From the NCBI RefSeq assembly GCF_046119375.1, contig NW_027367504.1, positions 1-57,504 of the forward strand: a stretch of 57,504 nt of DNA, given 5' to 3'. Under the pieces are notes generated by a model, which saw nothing but the letters and a program-made list of their open reading frames with translations, made no database searches and had not been told where the DNA came from. The translations under genes and the position numbers were made by a program. This document shows, piece by piece, positions 5,380 to 52,644 of this stretch; the stretch's first letter is position 1, and every line of letters starts with the position of its first letter. The stretch comes from Phyllobates terribilis (Eukaryota).

Positions 5380-5571
5380 TGTTAAGCTAATGAATTGATG
5401 ATAAAATGCTATATGTATATTCAATTGAGAGATGGTTCTTATAGAATTTACATGTTTTTAAATCAGGAAAACAATTCTAAAAATTCTCTAACAAATCTTA
5501 TCTTTCCTTAGAGAGAAGATATGCTACTGATTTGATTTTTTGAAATATGGAAAGAAAATATATGGTTTATA
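5380..5571 (-). repeat. 3' LTR of Copia-1 (192 bp)
   Basis: Direct repeat of 9762-9954; abuts the PPT-like ccccctgcaacctc (5572-5585). Confidence 0.93.
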
Positions 5572-5637
5572 CCCCCTGCAACCTCAACGGGACGGACGAA
5601 CTAGGAGGCGGTGCCGGAGAGATTGAAAACGTGATGA

Positions 5638-8600
5638 TCACACTGCCTTGGTGAAGATGTCAGCTACTTGATCATTAGCGCGAACACGTCGAACCACGAG
5701 ATCTCCTGCCTGAACTTGCTCGCGCACAAAATGGTAGTCAAGCTTGATGTGCTTGGAGCGTTGATGGAAGACTGGATTGGCCGTGAGAAAGGTTGCGTTG
5801 AGGTTGTCACAAAGGAGGATTGGAGGACCGGTGACAGGAACCTTCATCTCGCCAAGTAGCTGCTGGATCCACATTAGTTCTGCCGCGGCAAAAGCGATAG
5901 CACAATACTCCGCTTCTGTGCTGGAGCGGGCCACGACCTTCTGTTTTCGAGAGGACCAGCTGATCAGATTGTCGCCGTAGTAGATGGAGAAGACGTGTTG
6001 GGAACGGCAGTCGTCGGGGTCCGAAGTCCAGCCGGCATCGGTGAAGGTGACGAGCCGCGTGTCTGTTGCTTTGCCGAAGACCAAGCCATGAGAAGCGGTG
6101 CCTTTGAGATAGCGCATGATGCGTTTGACAGCAGCCTAGTGAAGCTCAGTTGGGTTATGCATATATTGACAGACGCGGTTGACTGCGTACGAGATCTCCG
6201 GACGGGTAATTATAGCATATTGAAGAGCACCGACAATGCTGCGATATTTGTGTGGATCAGAGAACGGGTCACCGGCTTGGACAAGGCGAGAAGCTGGTTT
6301 TGCAGGCAACGCAATGGGCATTGCACCAGACATGCCACAACGGTGTAAGATGTTGTAGATGTATTTCTGCTGGGATAGGTGAATGCCAGTGGAATGGCGC
6401 TGCACTTCGATCCCAAGAAAGAATCGGAGATCACCGAGGTCTTTGAGTGAGAAGGATGTGTTGAGACGACGGATGAAGTCTTCGATGAAGGCAGAGCCGA
6501 ACCCGGTGATAATAAGGTCGTCGACGTACACTAGAACATATGTGGTGGAGGAGGTGGTGCGTCGGATGAACATAGAGGTGTCGGAATGACAAGAGATGAA
6601 GCCGTGATGTAGGAGACATTGCTGAAGCTTGTGAAACCACATCCGAGGCGCCTGTTTGAGCCCATAGAGAGCCTTTCGAAGACGACAGACGTGAGATGGG
6701 AAGGCATTGGAGACGAAGCCTTGCGGTTGATCCATGAACATGGTTTCGATGAGGTCGTCGTTGAGGAAGGCATTGTTGACATGCACTTGTCATAGCGGCC
6801 AGCCATGGGAGACCGCAACACTAAAACAACGCGAATGGAAGTGGGTTTGACGACGGGGCTAAATGTGTCAAAGTAGTCAACTCCTTCCTCTTGATGAAAC
6901 CCCTTTGCGACAAGACGAGCTTTATATCTATCCACTGAGCCATCGGGGTTCGTCTTGATCCTGTAAACCCACTTACAACCAACCACATTAGTACCAACGG
7001 GCCGGGGAACAAGGTCTCAAGTCCAATTACGCAATAGAGCATCATATTCTAACTGCATCGCATGTTGCCATTTGGGATTTTTAGTGGCATGAATAAAGAG
7101 TTTAGGTGCAATTGTGGAAGGATCATCAGCAGGTGGAGGATATTTAGTGGTGATAAAAGTTTTGGGTTTGAGATTACCTGTACGGGAGCGGACTACCACC
7201 GAATGTTCGGAACTCGGAGCCGAACGAAAATAAGAGGGAGCTCCCGGGTATGTGGGTGGTGGTGCAGATGAGGGGGTTGGTGGGTTGTGGTTGTGGAGGG
7301 GGTGCGTCGGTAGCTGGGACGGGTCAGTGGGTGGTGAGGATGGCGGAGCCGGTAAGGATGGCGGGGATAGGGTGATGGCGTATGCAAGCTGGAGAGGGAC
7401 GGTGGAAGTGGGAAGAGGCGCAACATTCTGGTTCCGAGAGTGGTCGGTAGCAGAGTTTGGGAAACGCGTCTCATCAAACATGGCGTGGCGAACAATGTAT
7501 ATTTGGAGGTAGGTATGTGGTAGCATGAGTACCCTTTGTGTTTGGGGCTGTAGCCGATGAATATGCAAGGGACGGATCGAAATTCGAGCTTCGTTTTGGT
7601 GTAAGGACGGATGAAGGGAAAGCACAGGCAGCCGAACAACTTCATAAATCCATAGTCGGGGACACGGTTGTAGAGCTTCTCGAAGGGTGATGTGAAACCG
7701 AGAGTGGGGGTGATCGTGCGGTTGTTGGCGTAAACTGCGGTGTGAAAGGCGTGTGCCCAGAATTTGAGGGGGAGATTTGAGTGGGCGAGTAGGGTAGGCC
7801 TTTTTCAGTGATGGTTCGGTTTAGTGGCTCAGCGGATCCGTTTTGTTCGGGAGTATATGGGCAAGAGACTCGGTGTTGAATACCGAGAGTGGTGAGCAAG
7901 GTAGAGACGGAGCGATATTCCCCGCCCCAGTCGGTTTGCAAGGCTTTTATTTTGGTGGAAAATGGGGTTTCAATCATTTGTTTGAATTGCATGAACATAG
8001 GATAAACTTGGGATTTATTAGATAAAAAATATATCCAAATGAACTTGGTGCAATCATCAATAAAGGAAACATAATAGCCATCACCATTTAACGAAAGACA
8101 CGAAGCCGGTCCCCATACATCGGAGTGGACTAAGGCAAAAGGTGTTGTGGACGTTTGTTGGCGACGCGGAAGAGGTTGTCGGTGGCATTTTCCAAGTTGA
8201 CACGAGGAGCAAATCTGCGACAAGTTATTTGAGGAGGTAGGAAGGGAACAAGCGGAAGCAAGATGACGTAGTACAGACTCATGGGGATGAGCAAGACAGT
8301 GGTGCCAGCATTGTAAGGTGGTTCGTTCGCCAAGGTAAGCACGGGGAGGAGGGTGGTCGGTGGTTGTAGGCTTCAATGGTGGGATGGGAAGCCGGTAGAG
8401 GCCATTTTTAAGAGCCCCTCTTAGTAACGTCTGACCCTGAAGATCCTTCACAAGACAATGATAAGGGTGAAGTTCAAGATATAAGTTATTGTCACGGCAT
8501 AGTTTTGATGCAGAGATTAGATTTTTGTGAATTTGGGGAACAAATAGGACATGCTGTAGGTTTATGTGTTTAGACAAAACATTTGATACAGGAAGAATAG

Positions 8601-9731
8601 AACGAGCTATATGCGAAATGGGAAGAGATGTACCGTTACCGATCAACATGCCATCGTTACCGTCATAGGAGTGATTGATGGATAGGCGCCCCTAGGTCAT
8701 TGGTGACATGGTGCGTCGCGCCGGAGTCCAGAACCCAGGGATCGTGAAGGCTGGAGGGAGAGGACTCGGCCAGATATGCAGACGCAGTGGACTGTGGCTG
8801 CAGATGCGAGGAGTGCTGATGCGGAGCTGGACCGTTGGCAGATGCATTGGCGCGGCGAGTTGGGGGGTAGGCGGTGACATTGTGTCGTTGATAGCAATTC
8901 CGCGCCTCATGACCAACTTTGGAGCAGATCTGACACTTGGGGCGTGAAGATTCACGCGATGGTTGACCGGCAGTGGAGGAGTTGTTGTTGTTGCGGCAAC
9001 CGCGCCAGGCGACGTTTGCTTCCGGAACCACAGATTGAAGGGCAGTGGCTTCCTCTTCTAGTCGTTGTTCCTCTTGGGAGGAGAAGGTTGAGGAGATCAT
9101 CAGATGTTAGAGCACCGCTGTGGAGGCTGAGCGCGGAACGGAACGACCCATAAGCAGGGCCGAGACCATAGACAATAAAGGTCACCAAGTCGGAATCGGG
9201 AATGACAACAAGGCATTCAAGTAGACTATCCGCAATAGCACGCTTCTTTTCAAAGTAATCAAGAATTGTAGACGAACCTTTTTGAAGCGTCTGAAGTTTC
9301 TGGCGGAGGTGCATCTGGCGAGCATTTGTTTGAGTGTGAAACATCCGTTCCAAGATGGTCCAAGCCTCATGCGATGTGGTGGCTCTGGCGACGAGACCTA
9401 GGAGCGATGTGCTGATAGTGGAGCGGATCCAGACAAAAACCAGACGGTCCTTACGAACCCAGGCAGTTGAATCTGGGTTAACGATGGTGTGGGCTGCGAC
9501 ATCGGCGGTTGCAGCGCCCATGATTTCACGAGGAGGCGCGGCGTTCGGGACAAGACAGGGGTCAAGTTCATAGGCTTCAAGAGCCGAACGAATGGTGCCG
9601 CGTCACAAGGAGTAATTTGCGCGTTCCAATCGGAGGTGAATCTTTGGAAGCTGGATTATAGGGCCGGCGTTGGAGGTTGCAGCCATGGCCAAGACTTGAG
9701 CGGATGAAGCCGAATCGGGTGGGGTAGACAT
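5638..9731 (-). pseudogene. Copia gag-pol polyprotein, disrupted by frameshifts and stops
   Basis: Gag (NYSL-stop at a Trp position, 9603), zinc knuckle CQICSKVGHEARNC, protease WVLDSGATHH, integrase VHSDVWGP and [32 protein letters not shown], RNase H SWSSRKQKVVARSSTEAEY and ADIFTKA, spread over several ORFs. Confidence 0.95.
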
Positions 9732-9761
9732 GAACAGGATCGGTGTTTTAGGCTGATACCA

Positions 9762-9954
9762 TGTTAAGTTAATGAATTGATGATAAAATGCTATATGTAT
9801 ATTCAATTGAGAGATGGTTCTTATAGAATTTACATGTCTTTAAATCAGGAAAATAATCCCTATAAATCATCTAACAAATCTTATCTTTCCTTAGAGAGAA
9901 GATATGTTACTGATTTGATTTTTTGAAATATGGAAAGAAAATATATAATTTATA
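9762..9954 (-). repeat. 5' LTR of Copia-1 (193 bp)
   Basis: Direct repeat of 5380-5571; tRNA-iMet PBS immediately adjacent at 9751-9761. Confidence 0.93.
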
Positions 9955-10069
9955 TACGTATATTACAAAACTGGGTTGGAAAAAACCTATCCAAAAACAG
10001 TGGCCAACGTAAAAAAGTTAACACTTCTATGATGTGCTCGACAAATTAATGAGAATGCGAACTATGTCT

Positions 10070-10350
10070 GAAACTGACTAATTATCATTTCACGTGAACC
10101 AATATAATATACACAGAGCGGGCGCATGTTCAAGTATTCCGTGTGTTTGGTTTGATCGATGACCTATTACCAAGTCAAAACATAGAATATACATTAAGAT
10201 AGTCCTAGCCAACACAGAACCGTTTGAATTTTCATTATTTTAATTCACAGTCAACGTTTTTGACACACGACTGTCAATTTCATCATCGCATTCATAAGAC
10301 TCCCAAGCATTATATATACACGACCCCTCACAGCAAAAAATTATAAACAT
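10070..10350 (+). promoter_or_regulatory. Probable proximal promoter of the secreted-peptide gene: W-box cluster, G-box, TATA-like boxes
   Basis: AGTCAA (reverse TTGACT W-box) at 10173 and 10249, TTGAC at 10259, further TGAC cores near 10074, 10160 and 10272, CACGTG at 10091, TATATATA at 10311 and TATAAA at 10342. Confidence 0.55.
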
Positions 10351-10431
10351 CCAATTCAACCTACTAACTTACAACTTATTGTTGTGGCAATAATAAATTT
10401 GTTGGCCAATTCAAAAAGAGGAGATTTGAGT

Positions 10432-10674
10432 ATGAGTATTAGAAGGTGTACGATAGTAAGGGTGTGGGTTATGATCTTGTTGGCAGCGTGCATTTTTGTA
10501 TCCGAAGTGCGAGTTGGTGAAGCGATAAGACCACGGTTTGGTGGAGACGACGTAGTTCGGGAATGGCTGAGGGAATATGCGACGGTGTTGATGGAGTCGA
10601 TGCCGAGGGGGACAAAACCGCCGTCTAGTAGCTCGCCATGTTCCTTCATCCGCGGCGGCAAAGGCAAATGCTAG
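10432..10674 (+). CDS. Small secreted peptide precursor, CTNIP/SCREW-like phytocytokine (80 aa)
   Basis: Intact single-exon ORF from the ATG at 10432: hydrophobic signal peptide (RVWVMILLAACIFVSEVRVGEA-IRP), variable pro-region, and C-terminal SMPRGTKPPSSSSPCSFIRGGKGKC with two Cys, resembling the xLxRGxxPPSxxxPC...C pattern of the family. The ORF track start at 10384 is a GTG. Confidence 0.8.
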   Translation: MSIRRCTIVRVWVMILLAACIFVSEVRVGEAIRPRFGGDDVVREWLREYATVLMESMPRGTKPPSSSSPCSFIRGGKGKC

Positions 10675-11809
10675 CTGATTCGAATCATTCAGAGATCATT
10701 TTTTTGATCCATTCTTAGAATTTAGTAAAAATGACTCTTTTTTTTATTTTTTTATTAGGCTACTGTGTGAACGTGCATCGTTATCTAATTTTAGTTCATT
10801 AATTAGTGGCCCAGATCAAATGTAATAAAATGATATTAATATACCTGTACACATCAAGAAGTTTGGGATAGGTTCTTTTTTTTTGGTGCAAGATGGAAGA
10901 GTTATAGTGAAAAAAAATTGTAGTAGCAAAATTATGTATATTTTGAAAAGTATTCAAAGAAATGAAAAATATCCCAAATATTCCAACTCTTAATCGTAGA
11001 TAAAAATCTAATCACATCTTTAGGTCAACAAAAATGATACCATTTCTCAATGATCTACACTTTAATTTGAAAAGAAGGCAACAAGTTATGTTAGAGACTG
11101 TATAATAAAAATAATCTAGACAAAAGATTACTAAACTAAAGCATAGTGTTGTTAAAGAACGCACCTTATTTTTTACTTTTAAACACAGTATCACTTTCGA
11201 CGCTTTTTTTGGCAGAAACTGTCGGTTCCATTCTAAAAAATATTGTGGCTTCCAAACTGACCAGTACCGCCGGTTTGTGTACAGTCAGTACTGGCAGAAG
11301 CTACTTTGCTAGTACCCTCGGGAGACTTTATCTTCCAATTGGCATCCAATAATTAAATTTTGATAAAAAAAAAATTACAATATAACACATATATAGTCTA
11401 TTATATTATATTTTGATAAAAAAATGAGATGATTTACTAGCCTATAGCATTATCAAGATGATGTGATATACTAGCATATAACACTATTTTTGGCAACATA
11501 TTAATTGATGTTATTACTTATATAGCAAAAATGAGATGAATATTGAGGTTGATTCTTTGTCGATAACCAAGTTTCACTCCATTTTGGTTTTATATACCAC
11601 TATTTTTGGCAACGTAGTAAAAGTTACATTAAATTTAAGGTACATGAAGTCTATCAATGTAAGATTGAATATGGGGCATATGCGGAGCCATCAATTGTAA
11701 AGCCGATACTTCACGATGATATCCCCACATGTATGTAATTAGGGGGGGAATGGGCACTCGTCGTCAAGAAGAACCTAAAATACAGAAATAAAGTCGATTA
11801 GGATATATA

Positions 11810-14933: not shown

Positions 14934-16650
14934 ATGTTCAAGAAGATGAACGACAACTTAGACCGGATAAATGCCATGTTCGAGGCCGTTAAGACTTGCC
15001 CTACCCTACATCTCCCACTACCTACCCATTTAGGATTAAACTTTGAGATAGGAGGCTCTTCTAACCTAGCTAGTCGGTCACCATTAGGGCATCCAACAAC
15101 CGCCTATCAAGATGCCATGAATGATCCACCAATGCCTCCACTACCCGGGAAGCCACCTCAACAACCCATGTATTCGCACACTATCCCTCCAACGATCTAT
15201 ATACTGTCCTCCCGATCCCCTCAAAACTTTGGACAGTACCCTAGACCCGAGTACCCATTCCCTAACCCGACCTATGCCCCAAGGGAGTACACCCCTCATC
15301 CTTACTATCCTAACAATAGATGTGCATTTGCTCATGAATTTCAGGATTACCGAGGAAATGACATGAATTATGAAGGATGGAGAGGAGTACCTCAGCAAGG
15401 AGGACGTGAGCAAGGACATGACCAAGGAGTCCGAGAGAAAGAACAAGATGGTATAGCGAAGGTGAATGTCATGATACCACTATTCAAAGGAAAGTGTGAT
15501 TCGGATGTCTACATGGATTGGGAGACTAAGATCTAACAAATTTGTCATGCTACAACTTCCCCGAGCTTAAGAAGGTCCAATTAGCAGCCTTGGAGTTCCA
15601 TGGTTATGCAATGACATGGTGGAACAACTTTGTAAATGATAGGAGACGAACACTTGACCCGGGTGTAGTTCCTTGGGAGCAAATGAAGGCTCTCATGAGG
15701 ACCCGTTTTGTACCTCCACATCACAACCCGGGACCTTCATAAAAACTTAAGAAACTCAAACAAGTTTCAATGAGTGTGGAGGAAACCTTCAATGCCACAC
15801 AAATGGCTATGTCAAAGGCAAGTGTCATAGAGGATAAAGAAGCAACAATGGCAAGGTATCTTCGTATCCTAAACCCTTATTTGTCTAATGAGGTTGGTTT
15901 CTATCCTTATTACAGCGTGACGGAGCTCCTACACTTAGCCATCAAGGTGGAGACTAAGTTCAAGCTCCGAGGCCAGCAAGGTGGCAAGCCGAACCCTCCC
16001 TCCGACACTTGGCACAACAATGCATGTTCAGCCCCCTCCTATGGCCGTGAACCACCAAGGCCTTCTTCATATGAGCAAGGAGGATCATGGAAGGATCCCA
16101 CTAGCTCTACCTATCCTCCTATGTCAGCCAACACACCCTATCAAGGAATAAAAGGGAATGTCTCTAATCCCTCTTCTTCTCATGTTAAGTCTAGCTCCAT
16201 TGAATTCTCTAAAAGTAAGGGTAAGGGTCATTACATGCGAGATTGTCCTAACAAGAGAGTAATAATAGTCAATCAACTAGGGAAATATGACTCGAAATCT
16301 GATAGTGATGATGATAAACCCTTAGAATCTGAAATTAGGGAGCATGATAATGAATTAGGAGATGCAATTGAGATATCTTACATGGATGGAGACTCTTTGT
16401 TTTGCAACCGCACCTTGCATGCTAAATCTGATTTATGTGATGATAACCAAAGAGAGAACTTATTTCATACTAGATGCTTGGTTAAGAACAAGGTGTGTGA
16501 TGTGATCATAGATGGTGGGAGTTATTGCAACATTGCAAGCACCGAGCTTGTCTCTAAGTTGGAACTACGCCCATTCTTACATCCTAGGCCATATAGACTA
16601 CATTGGATAAATGAGTGTGGAGAATTGAAAGTGAATAAGCATATAATTTG
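14934..16650 (+). pseudogene. CRM-type gag and aspartic protease, disrupted
   Basis: IPLFKGKCDSDVYMDWETKI, KKVQLAALEFHGYAMTWW, WEQMKALMRTRFVP, degenerate knuckle GKGHYMRDC, QRENLFHTRC...IIDGGSYCNIAS...HPRPYRLHWINECGELKV; stops and frameshifts between ORFs. Confidence 0.88.
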
Positions 16651-17247
16651 CTAATTAATCATCCAAAATTCATAGAATTTATAGTATTCGTCATAAAGAA
16701 GATCTACAAGAGCGCAACATGCAAAAATCATTCAGTTTTAAACACAAGTTTCAACATAAGTAATATTAAATAATTATTCATAGTCGCAGTCACAGGCTCT
16801 TAGCAGACGTTGGTCGCAGTACGAGGGAGAGGGAAAGGGACAGCCGAACAAGGGTGAGAGGCGAGACGAGAGGGGAGGTGAGGTGAGAGGCAGCTGGTGG
16901 GACGAGAGGTGACGGCTTGACAAGATGGAGATGGGAGGTAGTAGGGACGACAAAGTTCTCATTTAAGAGGGAGAGGGGTGAGAGGTGAGAGGCGGAGGTG
17001 TGGGACGAACGAGAGAGTGGATTGCTTTTTAACTTTTAACCTAAATAAGAACACATGCTCCTTTCAAAAAAAAGAACTCATACCCCCGCCTAGAAAAAAA
17101 CGTAACGCCTAGGCGTGCGTAGCCTCCTAGGCGGCCGCCTAGGTGAGTGATTTTTTTCCCACCGCCTAGCAAAAAAGGACTATCAACTAGCCGAAACGTC
17201 AGGGTGCCACCTAGTGCCTAGGCGGTGCCGGGCTTTTTAAAACACTG
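16651..17247 (-). mobile_element. hAT transposon terminal fragment
   Basis: Minus strand begins CAGTGTTTTAAAAAGCCCGG at 17247, a hAT-type TIR, with clustered palindromic gcctaggc/cgcctag subterminal motifs at 17085-17225. The second TIR is absent. Confidence 0.7.
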
Positions 17248-22962: not shown

Positions 22963-25793
22963 TTACGGTAATGCATTAACAAGTACCTTTCTTTTTGTAT
23001 ACTTCCTTTTCTGAGGTTGAATGCGCATAGTACCCTCCTTAGAGGGTCTTCCACCCTTCTTAGTGCTTGTTGGTTTTACAAGAATCTTTGTTGGATTTTT
23101 ACAAGTCTTCCTAGTATGACCCTCTTCAGAACAGTTTCCACACTTGTTCTTCCCAACTCTCAACCTTGTTTTGGTTGTCTTGCTCTCTTCTCCAGGTTCC
23201 TTCCTTCTTGATTTTCTTGGTCTTCCAGGTTGAATTACAAGATTAGGTGGATCCAAATGTGGTTGGTTAGTTCTTTCCCATTGATTCTCTCCAGGCATCG
23301 GATTAACTGATAGGGCATAAGCTTTTAGATAGGTTTCTTTTAGGTAGTAGTCATCCACAAAATCTTCAACTTTCAACCTTCTCTTTAATATAAAGCTCAT
23401 TGCATGGGTGCATGGAATTCCAGTGATATCCCACATGTTGCAACCACGTCTTTTCTGCTAAATTAACAACGTAAGTGCTAGATCCACAATCAACTTCAAA
23501 CTTGTCACCATCTTCATAGCACTTGCACCTGTATACACTATTTGTTCTCGTTGTGTCTATCATTTTCATTGCTTCTAGAGTATGCAGTCTTGTGTGTTTC
23601 ATCATCTTGTTTCTCTTGCTTATAAACATGTTCATTAGCTTTGTTCTTATCCATTCACACATCGACAATATGGCCATTTCTCGAGCCTCTAATATATAAC
23701 TATAAAAGACTCACATGCATTATTCAACAGCATATCTGACTTTGTGTAGAACTTGAATGCATGAAGAGACCATGTTAAAGGATTCTGTTGCATCAAGTAC
23801 ATCTCAGCCTTTACATCCATGTCCTTGATCAATTTCATAGTTGACTCAAAGTCTGGTTTAGTTGAAGCTTTTGCAGTAGATCAAACAACATCCTTGAAAG
23901 ATTTTCATGGTCATTGCTTTTTGAAATTGTTATGGAGATGCCTTACACATACTCTAGTGTCTGCCAAGGGAGCAAACTCGGCTACTGCTTCAATCAAATC
24001 CTACAACATTAAGAACATGTGTTAAAGCATCTTATATGTGTTCCAAACTAAATAAAATATTACAAAGTACATTGTAAGAGTACTACCTTTTGCCTGTCTG
24101 ACATGAAAGTCATAGGTTTTCCACCTATGTCATGTAACAAGTTTTCCTAGAACCAGCACCATGTTGCCTTTGTTTCTTTCTCAACTACTGCATATGCCAC
24201 TGGAAAGAGATTTTCATTTCCATCCTTAGCCACAGCTGTCAAAATTTGCCCAGTGTATGCACCCTTCAAATGGCACCCATCCAACCCTATAATTGGCCTA
24301 CATCCTCTCAAAAACCCTTCCTTGCAAGCATTCAAGCACACATAGAATCTCTGAAACTTCAATGGCCTTTTAGGACTCTCTTCTGGCCTCACAAACACTG
24401 AACATCCAGGATTTCACTTAAGGATTGTTGCAGGCATAATCCCAAACCTTTGCATATTGCTCAGGTGCAAATCCTTAGGTCATTAAAAAATCCCTTACTC
24501 TAGCCCTCCAAGCTTGATGATATGTCACAGTCACACTGTAATCCCTCTTTATAGTTAGCACGAAGCTTTTGATCCTCCAATGCGGATCATCCCTGTAGTA
24601 CTCTAAGTACTTCTCAGCAAGCATTTTGGATGTCATCTTTGTATTTTTGTCTTGCCATCCACAGTGATGGTCTGGTGAAAAAGACTTAAGCTGGAAAGTA
24701 CCATGTGAACAGATACTCCTTCCACAAGACTTAAACCCACACAACTTCACCTTGCAAGAACACCTTCTCTTTCTCCCATTTTTCAGCCCACATTCACAAC
24801 TATTCAAACAATAAGCAGACACCTTTTTGCTATCATTGTAAAGATAATAATAATCAAAACCATTCTCTAATGCATATTGCCTTCTGAAAATTTCATTGGA
24901 GATAAATCTCATGCCAGATCTCAAACAGATAATATTTCTAAAGTCCACTAAGGGATTAAATTCAGGATATCTTATCCGTTTGTTGTCATCACTTCCACTA
25001 TAACTCCTGTTATCAACACTTTCAACGCTGATGTCAAATAGGTCTTCTAGTTCAACAACATCATTCTCCTCTCTGACAGACTCATCAAACACTTCCCTAT
25101 TAACATTTTTCTCAAATTCAGTATCATCATCCTCTGATTCATCACCAAGTGAAACTTCATGGAAGGAGATATCATCTGATTCATTACTATGAGATGATTC
25201 AGAAGCTAATATATCATCATCTTCACCACTTTCTTCCTCTGAATCTTGAAGTTCTATTGATGTAGATGCAATAAACCCCAATGTTGGAGGAATTTCGGAT
25301 GAAGATTTGGTGGTTAGGGTTGTGGATTTTGTGGGGTTTTGTGTATCATTGCCACTGGAAACAAATGGGCCTACACTTTGGGTCACTCTCATAGCTTTAG
25401 AGGATGGGCTACCAATATGAGCACCAACAATGACCAACCGACCCTTTTTGAAATCCATGAAAGAGTGTGGACTTTCTTCTAAGTCTTGGACAACATACAC
25501 ATCTAGCATGTTTTTGGTACCACCACTCTTACACAATTCTAGGGTATCCCTATCAACCTTAATCTCCTCTATTTCTCTGTGCAAAGTCTCACCTGATTTG
25601 CAATACCACAATTCTCTAGCATTTAGAGAAACTCCATCCTTAAAAAATGACTCCAGCTCAATCCTTGGAAGAAAATCTGGGTCAACATCACACTTATTGT
25701 GTACACTGATTTTTTCCTATAGCAAAGACTAGGACATGGGTCCTTAGCAATGTAGAAATTTCCTCCATACAAAAACCGTATGATAACACTCAT
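22963..25793 (-). pseudogene. MuDRA-like Mutator transposase, disrupted
   Basis: N-terminal FLYGGNF...DPD...LWY; MuDR DNA-binding region LRSGMRF; IGLDGCHLKG...FPVAYAVVEKE; TFMSDRQK followed by an 86-nt GT-AG intron (24001-24086); CVRHLHNN; NNACESF; SWIM WDITGIPCTHA; knuckle CGNCSEEGHTRKTC. Frameshifts and stops throughout. Confidence 0.92.
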
Positions 25794-46692: not shown

Positions 46693-47572
46693 CAATCAAT
46701 TGCAAGCCAATCAATGGTCAACGGAAGTTTCAAAGACAAATGTAAGCCTATGAAAAATATGGGTCAAGGTGGCATTGAATCAACATTCAATTCATTGATG
46801 AAACGGATTTTGTGAAACAAATGCAAGGCATTCTTGTGTGAATAAGAATAAGAATTAAGATTAAGAAATTCTTGTGTGAATAAACAATGCCAATTGAAGG
46901 AATTGAAGGAATTAAGTAGGGTATTAATTAGGGCAGTCAATTACAAGCCAATCAATGGCCAACGGAAGTTCGAAAGACAAATTTAAGCCTATGTAAAAGA
47001 GCGGTCAAGGTGGCATTGGATCAGCATAAAATCCATTGATAAAACGGATTTTGTTAAACAAATGCAAGGCATTCTTGTGTGAATAAGAATAAGAATTAAG
47101 ATTAAGAAATTCTTGTGTGAATAAACAATGCCAATTGAACGAATTGAAGGAATTGAGTAGGGTATTAGTTAGGGCAATCAATGGCCAATGGAAGTTTGAA
47201 AGACAAATGTAAGTCTATGAAAAGGAGGGGTCAAGGTGGCATTGAATCAACATTCAATCCATTGATGAAACGGATTTTGTGAAACAAATGCAAGGCATTC
47301 TTGTGTGAATAAGAATAAGAATTAAGATTAAGAAATTCTTGTGTGTATAAACAATGCCAATTGAAGGAATTGAAGGAATTAAGTAGGGTATTAATTAGGG
47401 CAATCAATTACAAGCCAATCAATGGACAACGGAAGTTTGAAAGACAAATGTAAGTCTATGAAAAAGAGGGGTCAAGGTGGCATTGAATCAACATTCAATC
47501 CATTGATGAAATGGATTTTGTGAAACAAATGCAAGGCATTCTTGTGTGAATAAGAATAAGAATTAAGATTAG
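46693..47572 (+). repeat. Tandem array A, about 241 bp unit, 3.7 copies
   Basis: Units start at 46693, 46934, 47175 (short deletion) and 47401; each contains the duplicated aattcttgtgtgaataa motif. Confidence 0.93.
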
Positions 47573-47670
47573 GATTAGAGTTTGTTGCTACATTTGGTGA
47601 ATTAGAATTTTGCAAACTAAAAATGCTTAAAAAACATCTCTTCATTTTACTGAAATGATCAAATTATGAA

Positions 47671-48699
47671 ACTACATCATCCATTTATGAATGAAATCCT
47701 TTATTAACTAAAATAATTTTACATTCTTACTCCTACAATCTGAATTCTAAACAATCAAAAAGGACAAAATCAACACATTTTATAAGTATTACTCCAATAA
47801 TCTGAATTCTTAACAATCAAAGACAAGACAACATATGAAATTAAATAAATGATATTACAGTAAATTGAAAGGGGAAAACTAGACAAAACCTGCTACTTGT
47901 TTTCCTTAACGAATCGGAGCTTCCAAGCTTAGATTTTCTTCAAACTATTAGTGAAATCAACGAACTCCACAAATCAAAACCACATAAATTGAAATATAAA
48001 ACTTAGGTAAAAAAACTACATCATCCATTTATGAATGAAAGCGTTATTAACTAAAATAATTTTACATTCTTACTCCTACAATCTGAATTCTAAACAATCA
48101 AAAAGGATAAAATCAACACATTTTATAAGTATTACTCCAACAATCTGAATTCTTAATAATCAAAGACAAGACAACATATGAAATTACATAAATGATATTA
48201 CAGTAAATTGAAAGGGGAAAACTGGACAAAACCTGCTACTTGTTTTCCTTAACGATTCGGAGCTTCCAAGCTTAGATTTTCTTCAAACTATTAGTGAAAT
48301 CAACGAACTCCGTAAATCAAAACCACATAAATTGAAATATAAAACTTAGGTCAAAAAACTATATCATCCATTTATGAATGAAAACGTTATTAACTAAAAT
48401 AATTTTACATTCTTACTCCCACAATCTGAGTTCTAAACAATCAAAAAGGGCAAAATCAACACATTTTATAAGTATTATTCCAACAACCTAAATTCTTAAC
48501 AATCAAAAACAAGACAACATATGAAATTACATAAATGATATTATAGTAAATTGAAAGGGGAAAACTGGACAAAACCTGCTACTTGCTTTCATTAACGAAT
48601 CAGAGCTTCCAAGCTTAGATTTTCTTCAAACTATTAGTGAAATCAACGAACTCCGCAAATCAAAACCACATAAATTGAAACATAAAACTTAGGTCAAAA
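47671..48699 (+). repeat. Tandem array B, 343-344 bp unit, 3 copies
   Basis: acta(c/t)atcatccatttatgaatgaaa starts at 47671, 48015 and 48358. Confidence 0.95.
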
Positions 48700-49613
48700 T
48701 GAAATTGGGTTATCACTTACCAAATAGTCTACCTTCGAGAGATCGAAGTGCGGGATGGCAATGGATGTGAACACCACTGACAGGGATTTATAGCAACGAT
48801 GATAGGCGTTTCAACCCTTCAAATGCTGCACAAACGAAGGAGAGGAAGATGGAAAGGCACAAATTAGGAAATTCAAGACTGCATTGATGCCGAAAAACTG
48901 TCGTTCAAACATTCATGTCTTTGACTCTAAAACTGCAAAGGAAAATCAATGCAAGCATTTGAAGTGGTGATTCAAGTGAATGGTGATCTAGGCCCAATTC
49001 GTATGGAAATTCGCCCGACCCAATAAACATGTACAATGTACAATAAGTAGAGCATTAATTTGGCCATACAATGCCAAAAAAGAAAGGCACAATAGCCCGT
49101 GCGTAGCACGGGCTATTGAAGACTTGTGTGCTTCGCACGGGCTTGTGTTTGGGTTGTTAGATCTTTGTATAAGTGAAAACATATATTGAGGCAACATTCT
49201 CCTTACAAATTAATAGAATAATTTGTTGCTTTAACATACAATGTGCATTGTCGATCAAGCACATATTTGGAATGAAGCTTTTTTTATTACGTAACTTGTG
49301 ACCATGTGTGATAGTCCATGGATTATTGTACATTACATTGTTTTTTATTATGTATGTAAGATTTCTTTGTTATTATTTGAGCCTATTTTTTAAAGTTTTA
49401 AATTCCATTTCATCCACTATATTAACTAACATCGTAAAATGACAACAAACTATATACACATATTAAGAATTGAAGGTAATAGAAAAGATGGAAGAAAACA
49501 TGCAGAAGAATAAAAAAATTTAGGACTAAATTGACATTAAGTTTGACTTTGCTTTGATATTGATCATTTTTCCCAATCATAAAACCACTCAATTTTTTTA
49601 TTCGTATTTATAC

Positions 49614-51050
49614 ATTCATGGTAATGGCTGCTCTTATGGGACTACATGCGTGCATTCATTTCTGTATTTATAGAGTGATAGAGATTATGCTTTGACTTCT
49701 GCAAAGAAGGGTCAGAACATTATAAGAGAAAAAGGTTTAAGGCGGTTTTGAGAGTGAGAATATTTAATTTTATTAAAGGATATGAAATGAATTACGTGGA
49801 GTCTTGGAATTCAAAGAGACATGAAGTTAATTTTAATTAATTTGACTATTTATCTTCTATAATCAAGTAGAGGTTAATACAAGTTCTATTTTATTTGAGA
49901 GTTTTTCATTTTTCTTTCGCATTTATTTCAAAAATGATCAATATCAAAATTAGGATGTTGAGAATATGCTTAAAAAACTCAACTTTATAAGGATTATGAT
50001 ATGATATGGTGTATAGATTCATGGTGATGGACTCTCTTATAGGACTGTATGTGTGTGTTCATTTATTTATTTATAGAGTAATGGAGGTGATGCTTTGACT
50101 TGTGCAAAGAAGGGTCGGAACATAGAAAGTGCAAAGGTTCAATGCGGTTTCAGAATAAAAAAAATTTTTATTTAATAGTAATAAAGGATAAGAAGTGAAT
50201 TATGTGGACGCAAAGATTAATTTACTTAATTTGACTATTTATCTTTCCTAATTGAGTAGAAGGGTAATGCAATTTTCATTTTATGTGAGAGATTCATGGT
50301 AATGGCCGCTCTTATGGGACTGCATGGGTGCGTTCATTTCTGTATTTATAGAGTGATAGAGCTTATGCTTTGACTTCTGCAAAGAAGGTTCGGAACATAA
50401 AAAGCGAAAAGGTTTAAGGCGTTTTTGAGAATGAGAATATATAATTTTACTAAAGGATATGAAATGAATTACATGGAGTCTTGGAATTCAAAGAGACATG
50501 AAATTAAATTTAATTAATTTGACTATTTATCTTCCATAATCATGTAGAGGGTTAATACAACTTCTATTTTATTTGGGAGTTTTCGTTTTTCTTTCGCATT
50601 TATTTCAAACATGATCAATAATAAAAATAAGGGTATGTTGAGAAATATGCTTAAAAACTCAACTTTATAAGGATTATGATATGATATGATGTATAGTTCA
50701 TGGTGATGGGCTCTCATATAGGACTGTATGTGTGTGTTCATTTATTTATTTATAGAGTAATGGAGGTAATGTTTTGACTTGTGCAAAGAAGGGTTTGAGC
50801 ATAGAAAGAGCAAAGGTTCAAAGCGGTTTCAGAATAAGAAATGATTTTTATTTAATAGTAATAAAGGATAAGAAGTGAATTATGTGGACTCTTGGAATTC
50901 AAAGGGACGCGAAGCTTAATTTACTTAATTTGACTATTTATCTTTCCTAATTGAGTAGAAGGCTAATGCAATTTTCATTTTATGTAAGAGATTTAGTTTT
51001 TCTTTCACACTTATTTCCAAAAAGATGATTAAAGAAAATAAGGGGAACTG
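49614..51050 (+). repeat. Tandem array C, 678-bp dimeric higher-order unit, about 2 copies
   Basis: attcatggtaatgg at 49614 and 50292; variant (a/g)ttcatggtgatgg at 50017 and 50696, giving an A-B-A-B pattern. Confidence 0.9.
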
Positions 51051-52644
51051 GAGAAATTTAAACAAAATCCAAGTTGAGTTTGAGGGCATATTTCTCAAAT
51101 CGATTTGATCTAATAAGAAAATCGAGTTTCTGATGTAGAGGGTCCCGTAGTGGGCAACTACAGAGCATACTTCTCAAATCAATTTAGATCTAAGAAGAAA
51201 ATCGAGTTTATTTAGATCTAAAAAAGAAAATCGAGTTTCTGATGTAGAGGATTCCGTATGTGGGCAACACAGAGCATACTTCTCAAAAGAGAGGAAGAGA
51301 GATGAAGAGAGGAAGATATTCTTACCCAATGGAGAATGTCTCTGTTTATAGGCTAAGTAGGAGGGATTGGGCTATTGGGCTAACCAAATTGGACCGAACA
51401 AATTGGACTGATTAATAGGAATTCTAGAGGTTAATGATGTCAAACAATAAGGAGGGTATTAATAATGCCAAACAATACCAATTTTAATAGTATATTAAGA
51501 TATAAACAATTTCCATTTGTATTTCTCGAAAGAAAATACTTACCAAATTCTTTTGGGCTCGATCATCGGTGTAGGTTCCTTTCTTTTTGCTATGATACAT
51601 TGCCGTAATACGTTCTTCTTGGGTCATTCTTCTACCATACTCTTTCTCCTACAAATTTCACAATTTGATTACTCAGTATATATGTTAGAAGATAAAACAA
51701 TTGATAGTAACAAATTTAAGTCGAACTTACAATTTTTTCAACATTTTCACACACAGATACATAACCTCCTGTATAATTAGAAAACCCACCCGGTCCTTCA
51801 ATTGCTCGGGTCTTCTTGTTAGTGTCACTAATACGCTTGAACTTTGCATCATTATCCAAATACCTTTTCATAGTAACCCAGTTTTCAGGACTTACAAATG
51901 CTGGTTTCTGATTTGTAGCTCGAGCATCATAAAAAGTATTCCTTAGGTGTTGGCTGCACTTGGTCTTCCAAATAGCATTTATCTTTGTTGCATGATGATC
52001 TTTCCAAAAGAAATGCTTCTACAAATTTAATGATGTCAAAATACACCTGATATATATCCCTTTTCTATATAGGTCAAAGAAAAAAAAATTACTACTTAAT
52101 CAAGATTTATATATTATATGTATGTATATATATGAAATTCTATCAGCACAAAAGTTTTTCACTTCACTTTAGATAGCAACCTGCATATTGGAATAACAAA
52201 AAAATTAAAGTAATTAGAATAATATGAAATTAATACTTCCTCTGTTCATTACTGTAGGTTGTTGGATTCTATACAAGAATTAAGAAAAAAAATAACTTAC
52301 ACATTATTAACTATATATCTATCTATTATATATAATAGCTAGGATGTTTTTATGGTAGTAAATGTACACAATTAACTCTCCTTCTTTCATCACAAGTCAC
52401 CATAGAATAGATGCTCTTGTGAATTGAGGTTTATGGATGAAGACTGAATAAACATGAATACAGAAAGATCAATTCTATGATGAATATATATAAGTTCAAC
52501 ATATATATCAAATAAGACTATAATGAAGATCTAAACTAGAAAGAAGTTGAAACGAGTAATACATATATACGGCTGAACACACAAATATACTGGTTAAAAT
52601 TCTATGCCATATTTGAACATATACAAGCTTATACTTTGGTTTGA

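What the first reader, a model, noticed from the sequence alone, without database searches (positions are those of the whole stretch)
10432..10674. Lone host gene: a divergent CTNIP/SCREW-like Cys-looped phytocytokine precursor in a TE field
Seen: an intact 80-aa ORF with a signal peptide and C-terminal RGTKPPSSSSPCSFIRGGKGKC (C-x9-C); it is the only convincing non-TE gene in 57 kb. Established: CTNIP/SCREW peptides are small secreted, two-Cys, stress-induced signals perceived by the LRR receptor kinase HSL3/NUT. Inference: this copy replaces the eponymous CTNIP pentamer with CSFIR, losing Asn and Pro, and has PPSSSS rather than PPSG. It could be a lineage-specific ligand variant with altered receptor specificity. 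Genes this short are easily missed by annotation.
Basis: partly seen in the sequence, partly recalled or inferred. Interest (0 to 1): 0.8.

Follow-up and report, generated by a model that had tools for sequence, protein, structure and literature searches.

The report
Divergent plant CTNIP/SCREW peptide gene
The 80-codon reading frame is an intact, unannotated plant gene of the known CTNIP/SCREW family of small secreted stress-signalling peptides; it differs at three normally conserved receptor-contact positions, and its activity is untested.

Summary
The ORF at 10432-10674 (+) is exactly as described: 80 aa, signal-peptide-like start, C-terminal C-x9-C.

It is a true CTNIP/SCREW homologue. An exhaustive phmmer search hit CTNIP-type precursors, one of them a carrot protein in the published "confident" CTNIP alignment. 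A profile of 120 family proteins, built without the window, scores the ORF at 53.5 bits; the best of 4000 shuffles scores 12.8. The same profile scores Arabidopsis CTNIP4 at 66 bits. The Arg-x10-Cys-x9-Cys register equals CTNIP4 R47/C58/C68.

- Asn is not conserved in the family (N/Y/H/F).
- PPSSSS occurs elsewhere.
- The real oddities are Arg in place of the near-invariant Pro62, Thr-Lys in place of Pro49-Val50, and a stop directly after Cys2.

Related species hold the ORF without indels, plus several paralogues. One paralogue fragment differs at 10 of 30 bases but still encodes PRGTKPPSS, so the peptide region is under selection.

No RNA run holds the gene. Receptor binding is inferred only.

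Caveat: the scan's index files this wholly plant-like window with poison-frog genes, so it may be a plant contaminant contig.

Verdict: a new, divergent member of a known family, of modest interest.

The parts
10311..10318 (+). TATA-like box (TATATATA), about 115 bp upstream of the ATG; candidate core promoter
   Evidence: Read directly from the sequence. No upstream ATG lies between it and the start codon. Inference only; no transcript data.
10432..10674 (+). Single-exon CDS of an 80-aa CTNIP/SCREW-family prepropeptide (stop TAG at 10672-10674)
   Evidence: ORF; phmmer hits at E 8e-7 to 7e-4 in 1.84 billion proteins; family HMM 53.5 bits, E 6e-15; same HMM scores AtCTNIP4 at 66 bits; no indels in the ORF in three related species, while the flanks are full of indels.
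10432..10524 (+). Predicted signal peptide, residues 1-31 (MSIRRCTIVR / VWVMILLAACIFV / SEVRVGEA, then IRP)
   Evidence: charge, hydrophobicity, -3/-1 rule. It aligns with the family's signal peptide and the conserved A-x-RP junction. The four listed non-synonymous differences in relatives are conservative and all lie here.
10525..10602 (+). Variable propeptide, residues 32-57, with the family's EWLRE...LMES block
   Evidence: Alignment to carrot KEWLREFEAPLLLES and other members.
10603..10671 (+). Putative mature 23-aa peptide PRGTKPPSSSSPCSFIRGGKGKC (net charge +5), equivalent to CTNIP4 residues 46-68
   Evidence: The register is identical to the minimal high-affinity CTNIP4(46-70) peptide. 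A paralogue fragment in a related species encodes LPRGTKPPSS despite 10 of 30 base differences. The processing site is inferred.
10639..10671 (+). Cys70 to Cys80 loop (CSFIRGGKGKC), predicted intramolecular disulfide; Ile73 = CTNIP4 Ile61, Arg74 stands at the Pro62 position
   Evidence: The 9-residue spacing meets the published 9-11 criterion. Loop length 9 occurs in 35/109 members. The need for the disulfide was shown for CTNIP4/SCREW2 only.

Best explanation
This is an intact single-exon plant gene for a divergent member of the CTNIP/SCREW phytocytokine family. Shown here: homology over the whole precursor, the same Arg-x10-Cys-x9-Cys register as Arabidopsis CTNIP4, and conservation of the coding frame and peptide sequence in related species. 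Inferred from the family: the first 31 residues act as a signal peptide; the propeptide is cut just before Pro58-Arg59; the released 23-residue basic peptide closes a Cys70-Cys80 disulfide loop; and it binds the acidic groove of an HSL3/NUT-type LRR receptor kinase and recruits a SERK/BAK1 co-receptor to trigger stress signalling. The Arg47 anchor, the Ser53 equivalent, the Pro-Pro-Ser core, Ile61 and both cysteines are kept. Pro49-Val50 has become Thr-Lys, Pro62 has become Arg, and there is no residue after the second Cys, so affinity or receptor choice probably differs from canonical CTNIPs. My odds: family membership about 0.95; a working secreted ligand about 0.6.
For: - ORF and anatomy.
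- Exhaustive phmmer: five CTNIP-type precursors at E 8e-7 to 7e-4 in 1.84 billion proteins.
- One hit, carrot KZN09686, is in the published CTNIP_confident alignment.
- A profile search finds 280 family proteins across eudicots.
- An HMM built without the window scores the ORF at 53.5 bits, against at most 12.8 for 4000 shuffles, and scores AtCTNIP4 at 66 bits.
- Relatives: the ORF is gap-free in three other species while the flanks carry many indels. Alignments of divergent paralogues stop at the stop codon. One paralogue fragment has 10/30 base changes but 9/10 identical residues; none of 200,000 neutral simulations reached that.
- ORF G+C is 52% against 27-35% in the flanks.
- Function of the family: PMC9191895, PMC13585564, PMC13261660.
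Against: - No RNA run of the labelled species holds any word of the gene, though those runs are small (about 0.2 Gb).
- Pro62, called one of the two most conserved ligand residues and the one that keeps the peptide turn (preprint 10.64898/2025.12.22.696113), is Arg here.
- P62W lowered NUT binding 2- to 7-fold.
- Pro49, which H-bonds NUT Q120, and Val50 are replaced.
- The ORF sits on a tree branch about 8 times the median length.
- Nucleotide divergence of the ORF from its orthologues (3-7%) is no lower than that of the flanks.
- The list of differences in relatives was truncated, so dN/dS and the state of codon 74 in relatives are unknown.
- No SignalP run was possible.
Confidence: 0.75

Rival explanations
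1. It is a family member by descent, but this copy is a silent or decaying relic in a transposon-rich region. The Pro62-to-Arg and Pro-Val-to-Thr-Lys changes would then be damage, and the open frame is short enough to have survived by luck.
For: - No RNA support.
- Very long branch.
- Changes at contact residues that matter in CTNIP4/SCREW2.
- A copia insertion lies 478 bp upstream.
- The ORF is no more conserved at the base level than its flanks.
Against: - The frame is intact and gap-free in three other species, while the flanks are riddled with indels.
- The unusual Thr-Lys is kept in a paralogue through mostly synonymous change.
- The listed differences in the mature part are synonymous (G37, P69), and the non-synonymous ones are conservative changes in the signal peptide.
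- The ORF has a coding-type G+C rise.
Confidence: 0.2
2. It is a working ligand that has been retargeted. The altered contact residues fit a co-evolved HSL3/NUT, or the sister NUT-like (NUTL) receptor clade of dicots whose pocket residues differ. Alternatively it acts as a competitive antagonist that binds but recruits the co-receptor poorly.
For: - The changes fall on receptor or co-receptor contacts: P49, and I61-P62 in the hydrophobic pocket.
- The Thr-Lys variant is conserved among paralogues.
- Ligand-receptor co-evolution is documented: MtHSL3 responds only to its own CTNIP.
- Pocket residues are reported to diverge in the NUTL clade.
Against: There is no receptor sequence from this plant and no binding data. 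Whether Arg74 is shared by relatives is unknown. The same facts fit plain drift.
Confidence: 0.2
3. It belongs to another small-peptide family that shares the Pro-rich core, such as IDA/IDL, rather than to CTNIP/SCREW.
For: - The feature-based atlas search puts it next to clusters carrying Pfam PF27884 'IDL5'.
- IDA/IDLs and SCREWs share a PVPxSGPN/S core.
Against: - It has the two-Cys loop and lacks the C-terminal His-Asn end of IDA-type peptides.
- All significant sequence hits are two-Cys CTNIP-type proteins.
- PF27884 also marks some of those CTNIP-type hits.
Confidence: 0.03
4. It is a chance open reading frame in AT-rich intergenic DNA.
For: The window has 43 ATG-started ORFs of 80 aa or more, so length alone means nothing.
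Against: The HMM score of 53.5 bits compares with 12.8 for the best of 4000 shuffles and 8.8 for any other ORF in the window. The frame is conserved in relatives.
Confidence: 0.01

Closest known systems
Arabidopsis CTNIP4 / SCREW2 (AT2G31345), ligand of HSL3/NUT with BAK1/SERK
   Same: Both are small precursors with a signal peptide, an A-x-RP junction, a variable propeptide and a C-terminal peptide. The register is identical (R47...C58-x9-C68 against R59...C70-x9-C80). The Ser53 equivalent and Ile61 are kept, and both peptides have net charge +5. Pairwise identity is 29% over the full length.
   Different: Window against CTNIP4: Thr-Lys for Pro49-Val50; Ser-Phe for Thr59-Asn60; Arg for Pro62; Ser for Asn56. 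There is no His69-Asn70 tail, and His69 makes a salt bridge in the complex. Function was shown only for the Arabidopsis peptide.
Daucus carota KZN09686 / DCAR_0102430 (P0004), listed in the published CTNIP_confident alignment
   Same: It shares KEWLREF...LLES and RG..PPSSSSPC with the window; phmmer E is 4.6e-6. In a weakly supported tree the window groups with this carrot and other Apiales proteins (support 0.57).
   Different: The carrot protein has the canonical GPV and CTNIP motifs and a 25-residue tail after Cys2. Identity is only about 42%.
Saponaria officinalis RND81_14G132000 (P0002)
   Same: It is the best small-protein phmmer hit (E 8e-7). It has AIRP after the signal peptide, Phe at C+2 and a 9-residue loop. 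It was the only one of the 109 members tabulated that also ends exactly at the second Cys.
   Different: It keeps Pro at C+4 (CTFIPGGTGHC), and its core is GSGTGSGSNP rather than PPS.
IDA / IDA-LIKE peptides (ligands of HAESA, HSL1 and HSL2)
   Same: They share the Pro-rich PxPPS-type core that occupies the equivalent receptor groove. Pfam 38.1 'IDL5' (PF27884) marks neighbouring clusters.
   Different: IDA/IDLs are linear, have no Cys loop and end in His-Asn. The window peptide has the loop and no such end.
Monocot DEP peptides (DEPR1 ligands; CTNNP motif)
   Same: They are single-disulfide looped peptides perceived by receptors of the NUT superclade.
   Different: DEPs have Asn at the Ile61 position, a longer N-terminal part and a larger loop. 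The window has Ile and the short 9-residue loop, so it is SCREW-type.

Membership tests
CTNIP/SCREW | Small precursor (<150 aa) with an N-terminal signal peptide | tested here: met
   80 aa. The n/h/c regions and the -3/-1 rule fit, and the region aligns with the family's signal peptide and A-x-RP junction. Heuristic only; SignalP was not available.
CTNIP/SCREW | Two C-terminal cysteines spaced 9-11 residues apart (the filter used for the 'confident' set in PMC9191895) | tested here: met
   Cys70 and Cys80 are 9 residues apart.
CTNIP/SCREW | Significant sequence homology to curated or experimentally studied members | tested here: met
   phmmer hit to carrot KZN09686, which is in the published confident alignment. 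An HMM built without the window scores it at 53.5 bits, E 6e-15, and scores AtCTNIP4 at 66 bits.
CTNIP/SCREW | N-terminal anchor Arg and core Ser in register (Arg47, Ser53 of CTNIP4; Arg-x10-Cys) | tested here: met
   The Arg-to-Cys distance is 11, as in 106/109 members. Ser at the Ser53 position occurs in 100/109.
CTNIP/SCREW | Pro-Val after Arg-Gly (Pro49-Val50); highly conserved but not used as a family criterion | tested here: not met
   The window has Thr-Lys. T occurs in 3/109 and K in 0/109. Thr-Lys is conserved in a paralogue fragment of a related species.
CTNIP/SCREW | C-[TS]-x-I-P motif: Ile61 in the hydrophobic pocket | tested here: met
   Ile73; I occurs in 96/109. Ile61 is critical for binding and function.
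CTNIP/SCREW | C-[TS]-x-I-P motif: Pro62; highly conserved, and 6/109 sampled members also lack it | tested here: not met
   Arg74; P occurs in 103/109 and R in 0/109. No C..IR variant appears in the published alignments. Arabidopsis members already vary elsewhere in the pentamer (CSHIP, CTHIP), so I treat this as a conserved residue and not a defining one.
CTNIP/SCREW | Intramolecular disulfide needed for activity | not testable with these tools
   Shown for CTNIP4/SCREW2 only.
CTNIP/SCREW | Perception by HSL3/NUT with a SERK co-receptor | not testable with these tools
   No receptor sequence of the source plant is available, and there are no binding data.
CTNIP/SCREW | Stress- or elicitor-induced expression | tested here: inconclusive
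   No RNA run holds the gene's words, but only a few small runs exist. Two TTGACY W-box matches lie within 260 bp upstream, which is not significant.
IDA/IDL | Linear peptide ending in a conserved His-Asn, without a Cys loop | tested here: not met
   The ORF ends ...GGKGKC with a two-Cys loop and no His-Asn.
Monocot DEP | CTNNP motif (Asn at the Ile61 position), larger loop, longer N-terminal region | tested here: not met
   The window has Ile73 and a 9-residue loop.

The most novel reading that the evidence does not exclude
The gene represents a lineage-specific CTNIP subfamily (core RGTKPPS, loop CSFIR, no tail) that is kept by selection. It would signal through a receptor pocket different from canonical HSL3/NUT, for example the dicot NUT-like clade, or act as a natural antagonist that binds but recruits the SERK co-receptor poorly.
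Probability: 0.2. Interest if true: 0.55.

Novelty: new member of a known kind. Interest (0 to 1): 0.3.

Why it matters
CTNIP/SCREW peptides and HSL3/NUT are a recently solved ligand-receptor pair, and structures now say which ligand residues matter. This gene is a natural test of those rules. It lacks Pro62 and the Pro-Val dipeptide but keeps the Arg anchor, the Ser, the Ile and the disulfide, and it appears to be under selection. It could also be a candidate ligand for a receptor with a diverged pocket, such as the dicot NUT-like clade. It is one more example of a short peptide gene that annotation misses. If the contig is a plant contaminant in an animal assembly, the practical value is as a contamination flag. 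The finding does not change what is known about the family.

Tried and rejected
- The word-based protein search with the single ORF found nothing. Only the exhaustive HMMER search and the profile search worked.
- Pfam-A (local copy) gave only noise, PycTM at E 0.23. The local library lacks PF27884, so that model could not be tested.
- The top phmmer hit, P0001, is an 899-aa protein with six repeats resembling EWLxE..L...PG.K. I judged it a summed compositional match and not a relative.
- W-box enrichment in the promoter is not significant: 2 sites in 260 bp, and 71 in the window against 75 expected.
- The bacterial-type promoter and terminator scan is irrelevant here.
- Rfam found nothing in the window.
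- Exact-sequence look-ups for the window's ORF and for two copia ORFs found no record, so the source organism could not be named.
- dN/dS could not be computed, because the only read-laying run listed 40 differences and left 86 unshown.
- The tree gives only weak placement (support 0.57-0.67).
- The primary DEP paper is not in the library.

Full report
**Observation.** Searches show an ATG-to-TAG ORF at 10432-10674 on the + strand.
- A TATA-like box lies at 10311-10318, and no upstream ATG follows it.
- The first 31 residues have the three parts of a signal peptide: charge +3, a 13-residue hydrophobic core, then Gly at -3 and Ala at -1 before IRP. This is a heuristic reading, since no SignalP was available.
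- The ORF is 52% G+C, against 35% upstream and 27% downstream.
- Length alone is not evidence, because the window has 43 ATG-started ORFs of 80 aa or more.

**Surroundings.**
- A copia element with LTRs at 5380-5571 and 9762-9954 (93-94% alike) and gag, integrase and RT domains ends 478 bp upstream.
- Repeat contigs of a related species break exactly at 9954/9955.
- High-copy sequence resumes near 11120.
- Other large ORFs are plant MuDR transposase (24475-25611) and Ty3-type gag (15770-16654).
- The copia integrase's named relatives are all from angiosperms, at 52% identity at best.
- So the gene sits on a unique island of about 1.2 kb in a plant transposon field and is not inside an element.

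**Family.**
- A word-indexed search and Pfam were blank.
- An exhaustive phmmer search of 1.84 billion representatives gave five small plant proteins at E 8e-7 to 7e-4. They come from Saponaria, carrot and Hevea, plus one from an unnamed public assembly.
- They share the whole layout: signal peptide, A-x-RP, EWL[RK], ES[LM][PQ][RK]G..PPS..SPC..I.G.G..C.
- The carrot hit is, residue for residue, the entry Dcarota_9721_KZN09686 in the published CTNIP_confident alignment of Rhodes et al. 2022 (PMC9191895).
- A profile search returned 280 relatives across eudicots, nearly all named 'hypothetical'.
- An HMM built from 120 of them, without the window sequence, scores the ORF at 53.5 bits (E 6e-15). 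The best of 4000 shuffles scores 12.8 bits and the best of 962 other window ORFs scores 8.8 bits.
- The same HMM scores Arabidopsis CTNIP4 at 66 bits.
- The window's Arg59-x10-Cys70-x9-Cys80 matches CTNIP4 Arg47-x10-Cys58-x9-Cys68 exactly.
- The 9-residue Cys spacing passes the published 9-11 filter.
- Family membership is therefore well supported.

**What is and is not unusual.** In 109 two-Cys members the consensus is [QP][RK]GPVPPS..[SN]PCT[NYHF]IPG...C.
Phe is ordinary, and the Medicago peptide that activated MtHSL3 reads CTFIP.
- PPSSSS also occurs in carrot.
- Arg at the Pro62 position is a real rarity: P 103/109, R 0/109, and no C..IR form in the published alignments.
- Thr-Lys at Pro49-Val50 is also rare (T 3/109, K 0/109).
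- A stop directly after Cys2 is shared only with the Saponaria protein.
- These positions matter in the solved complexes:
  - Pro49 H-bonds NUT Q120.
  - Ile61-Pro62 insert into a hydrophobic region, and P62W lowers binding 2- to 7-fold (PMC13261660).
  - A preprint names Ser53 and Pro62 as the most conserved ligand residues, with Pro62 keeping the turn (10.64898/2025.12.22.696113).
- Kept in the window are the Arg anchor, the Ser53 equivalent, Ile61, both cysteines and a net charge of +5 that suits the acidic groove.
- In a FastTree of the family the ORF sits on a branch about 8 times the median length, weakly next to the carrot and other Apiales CTNIPs.

**Conservation.** Contigs of four runs from three other species were laid on 9900-11300 at 80% identity or more.
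- The closest copies differ by 3-7% and cover the ORF without a single gap, while the flanks carry many indels and replaced segments.
- Two species hold further copies that are 10-16% divergent. Their alignments lie within the coding sequence and end at 10672-10676, at or just past the stop codon.
- One such contig continues upstream with 30 bases that differ from the window at 10 positions yet encode LPRGTKPPSS against MPRGTKPPSS. None of 200,000 neutral simulations kept 9 of 10 residues.
- So the peptide-coding part, including the odd Thr-Lys, is under purifying selection in this lineage.
- Of the eight ORF differences the tool listed, four are synonymous (L16, A18, G37, P69). Four are conservative changes, all in the signal peptide (I3M, A18V, F22L, S24C).
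- The list was truncated, with 86 differences not shown. I therefore could not compute dN/dS or see whether Arg74 is shared.

**Expression.** No RNA run of the labelled species holds any sampled word of the gene. Those runs are small (about 0.2 Gb), and family members are typically stress-induced, so this is weak negative evidence. Two W-box matches upstream are not more than chance.

**Mechanism.** Homology, register and selection are shown. The rest is inferred from CTNIP4/SCREW2:
- secretion;
- cleavage before Pro58-Arg59;
- a Cys70-Cys80 disulfide;
- binding to an HSL3/NUT-superclade LRR receptor kinase;
- SERK recruitment.

The altered contact residues make unchanged affinity for a canonical HSL3 unlikely. 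A co-evolved receptor, the dicot NUT-like clade or an antagonist role are open possibilities. A silent relic remains a fair rival (about 0.2).

**Provenance caveat.** The scan's own index places this window in one 'genome' with many poison-frog genes and at least two other plant Mutator pieces. Everything in the window is angiosperm. A run labelled as a different organism holds 151- and 200-base stretches identical to it. The odd length of 57,504 bases looks like a whole small contig. It may be plant contamination of an animal assembly; I could not test this.

**Verdict.** This is a new, divergent member of a known peptide family, of modest interest unless the variant residues prove to redirect receptor choice.

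Noticed in passing
whole window (1-57504): The scan's index files this window under the same 'genome' as many poison-frog genes and two plant Mutator pieces, yet all recognisable content here is angiosperm (CTNIP gene, copia, MuDR, Ty3 gag). A run with another organism label (X3) holds stretches identical to the window. It may be a plant contaminant contig in an animal assembly, or the index lumps two genomes.
   Followed up: partly
window 5380-9954: A copia-type LTR retrotransposon on the minus strand. Its LTRs lie at 5380-5571 and 9762-9954 and are 93-94% alike. Gag, integrase and RT domains are split over several ORFs, so it is an old, broken copy. Its right end at 9954 coincides with the break point of repeat contigs in a related species.
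   Followed up: partly
window 46696-51057: There are three long-period tandem arrays: 241 nt x 3.7, 343 nt x 3.0 and 411 nt x 1.9. They lie inside the 45.8-51.5 kb insertion that another first-reader note calls Helitron-ended. TTGACT recurs at irregular spacings of about 135-255 bp between 49543 and 50930.
   Followed up: no
window 24475-25611 (-) and 15770-16654 (+): These ORFs have no hit in the local Pfam copy. A feature-based atlas search places them with plant MuDR transposase (DBD_Tnp_Mut) and Ty3-type gag/zf-CCHC clusters.
   Followed up: partly
proteins P0003, P0187, P0227: These are Cys-less plant precursors with two to four tandem copies of an SLQ[RK]GPVPPSxPNP unit. They share the CTNIP core but lack the loop, and some carry Pfam 38.1 PF27884 'IDL5'. 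They hint at a continuum between IDA-like and CTNIP-type precursors.
   Followed up: no
protein P0001: This 899-aa protein has six repeats resembling the window's EWLREYATVLMESMPRGTK stretch. It topped the phmmer list at E 4e-10 through summed repeats. I judged it a chance or compositional match.
   Followed up: no
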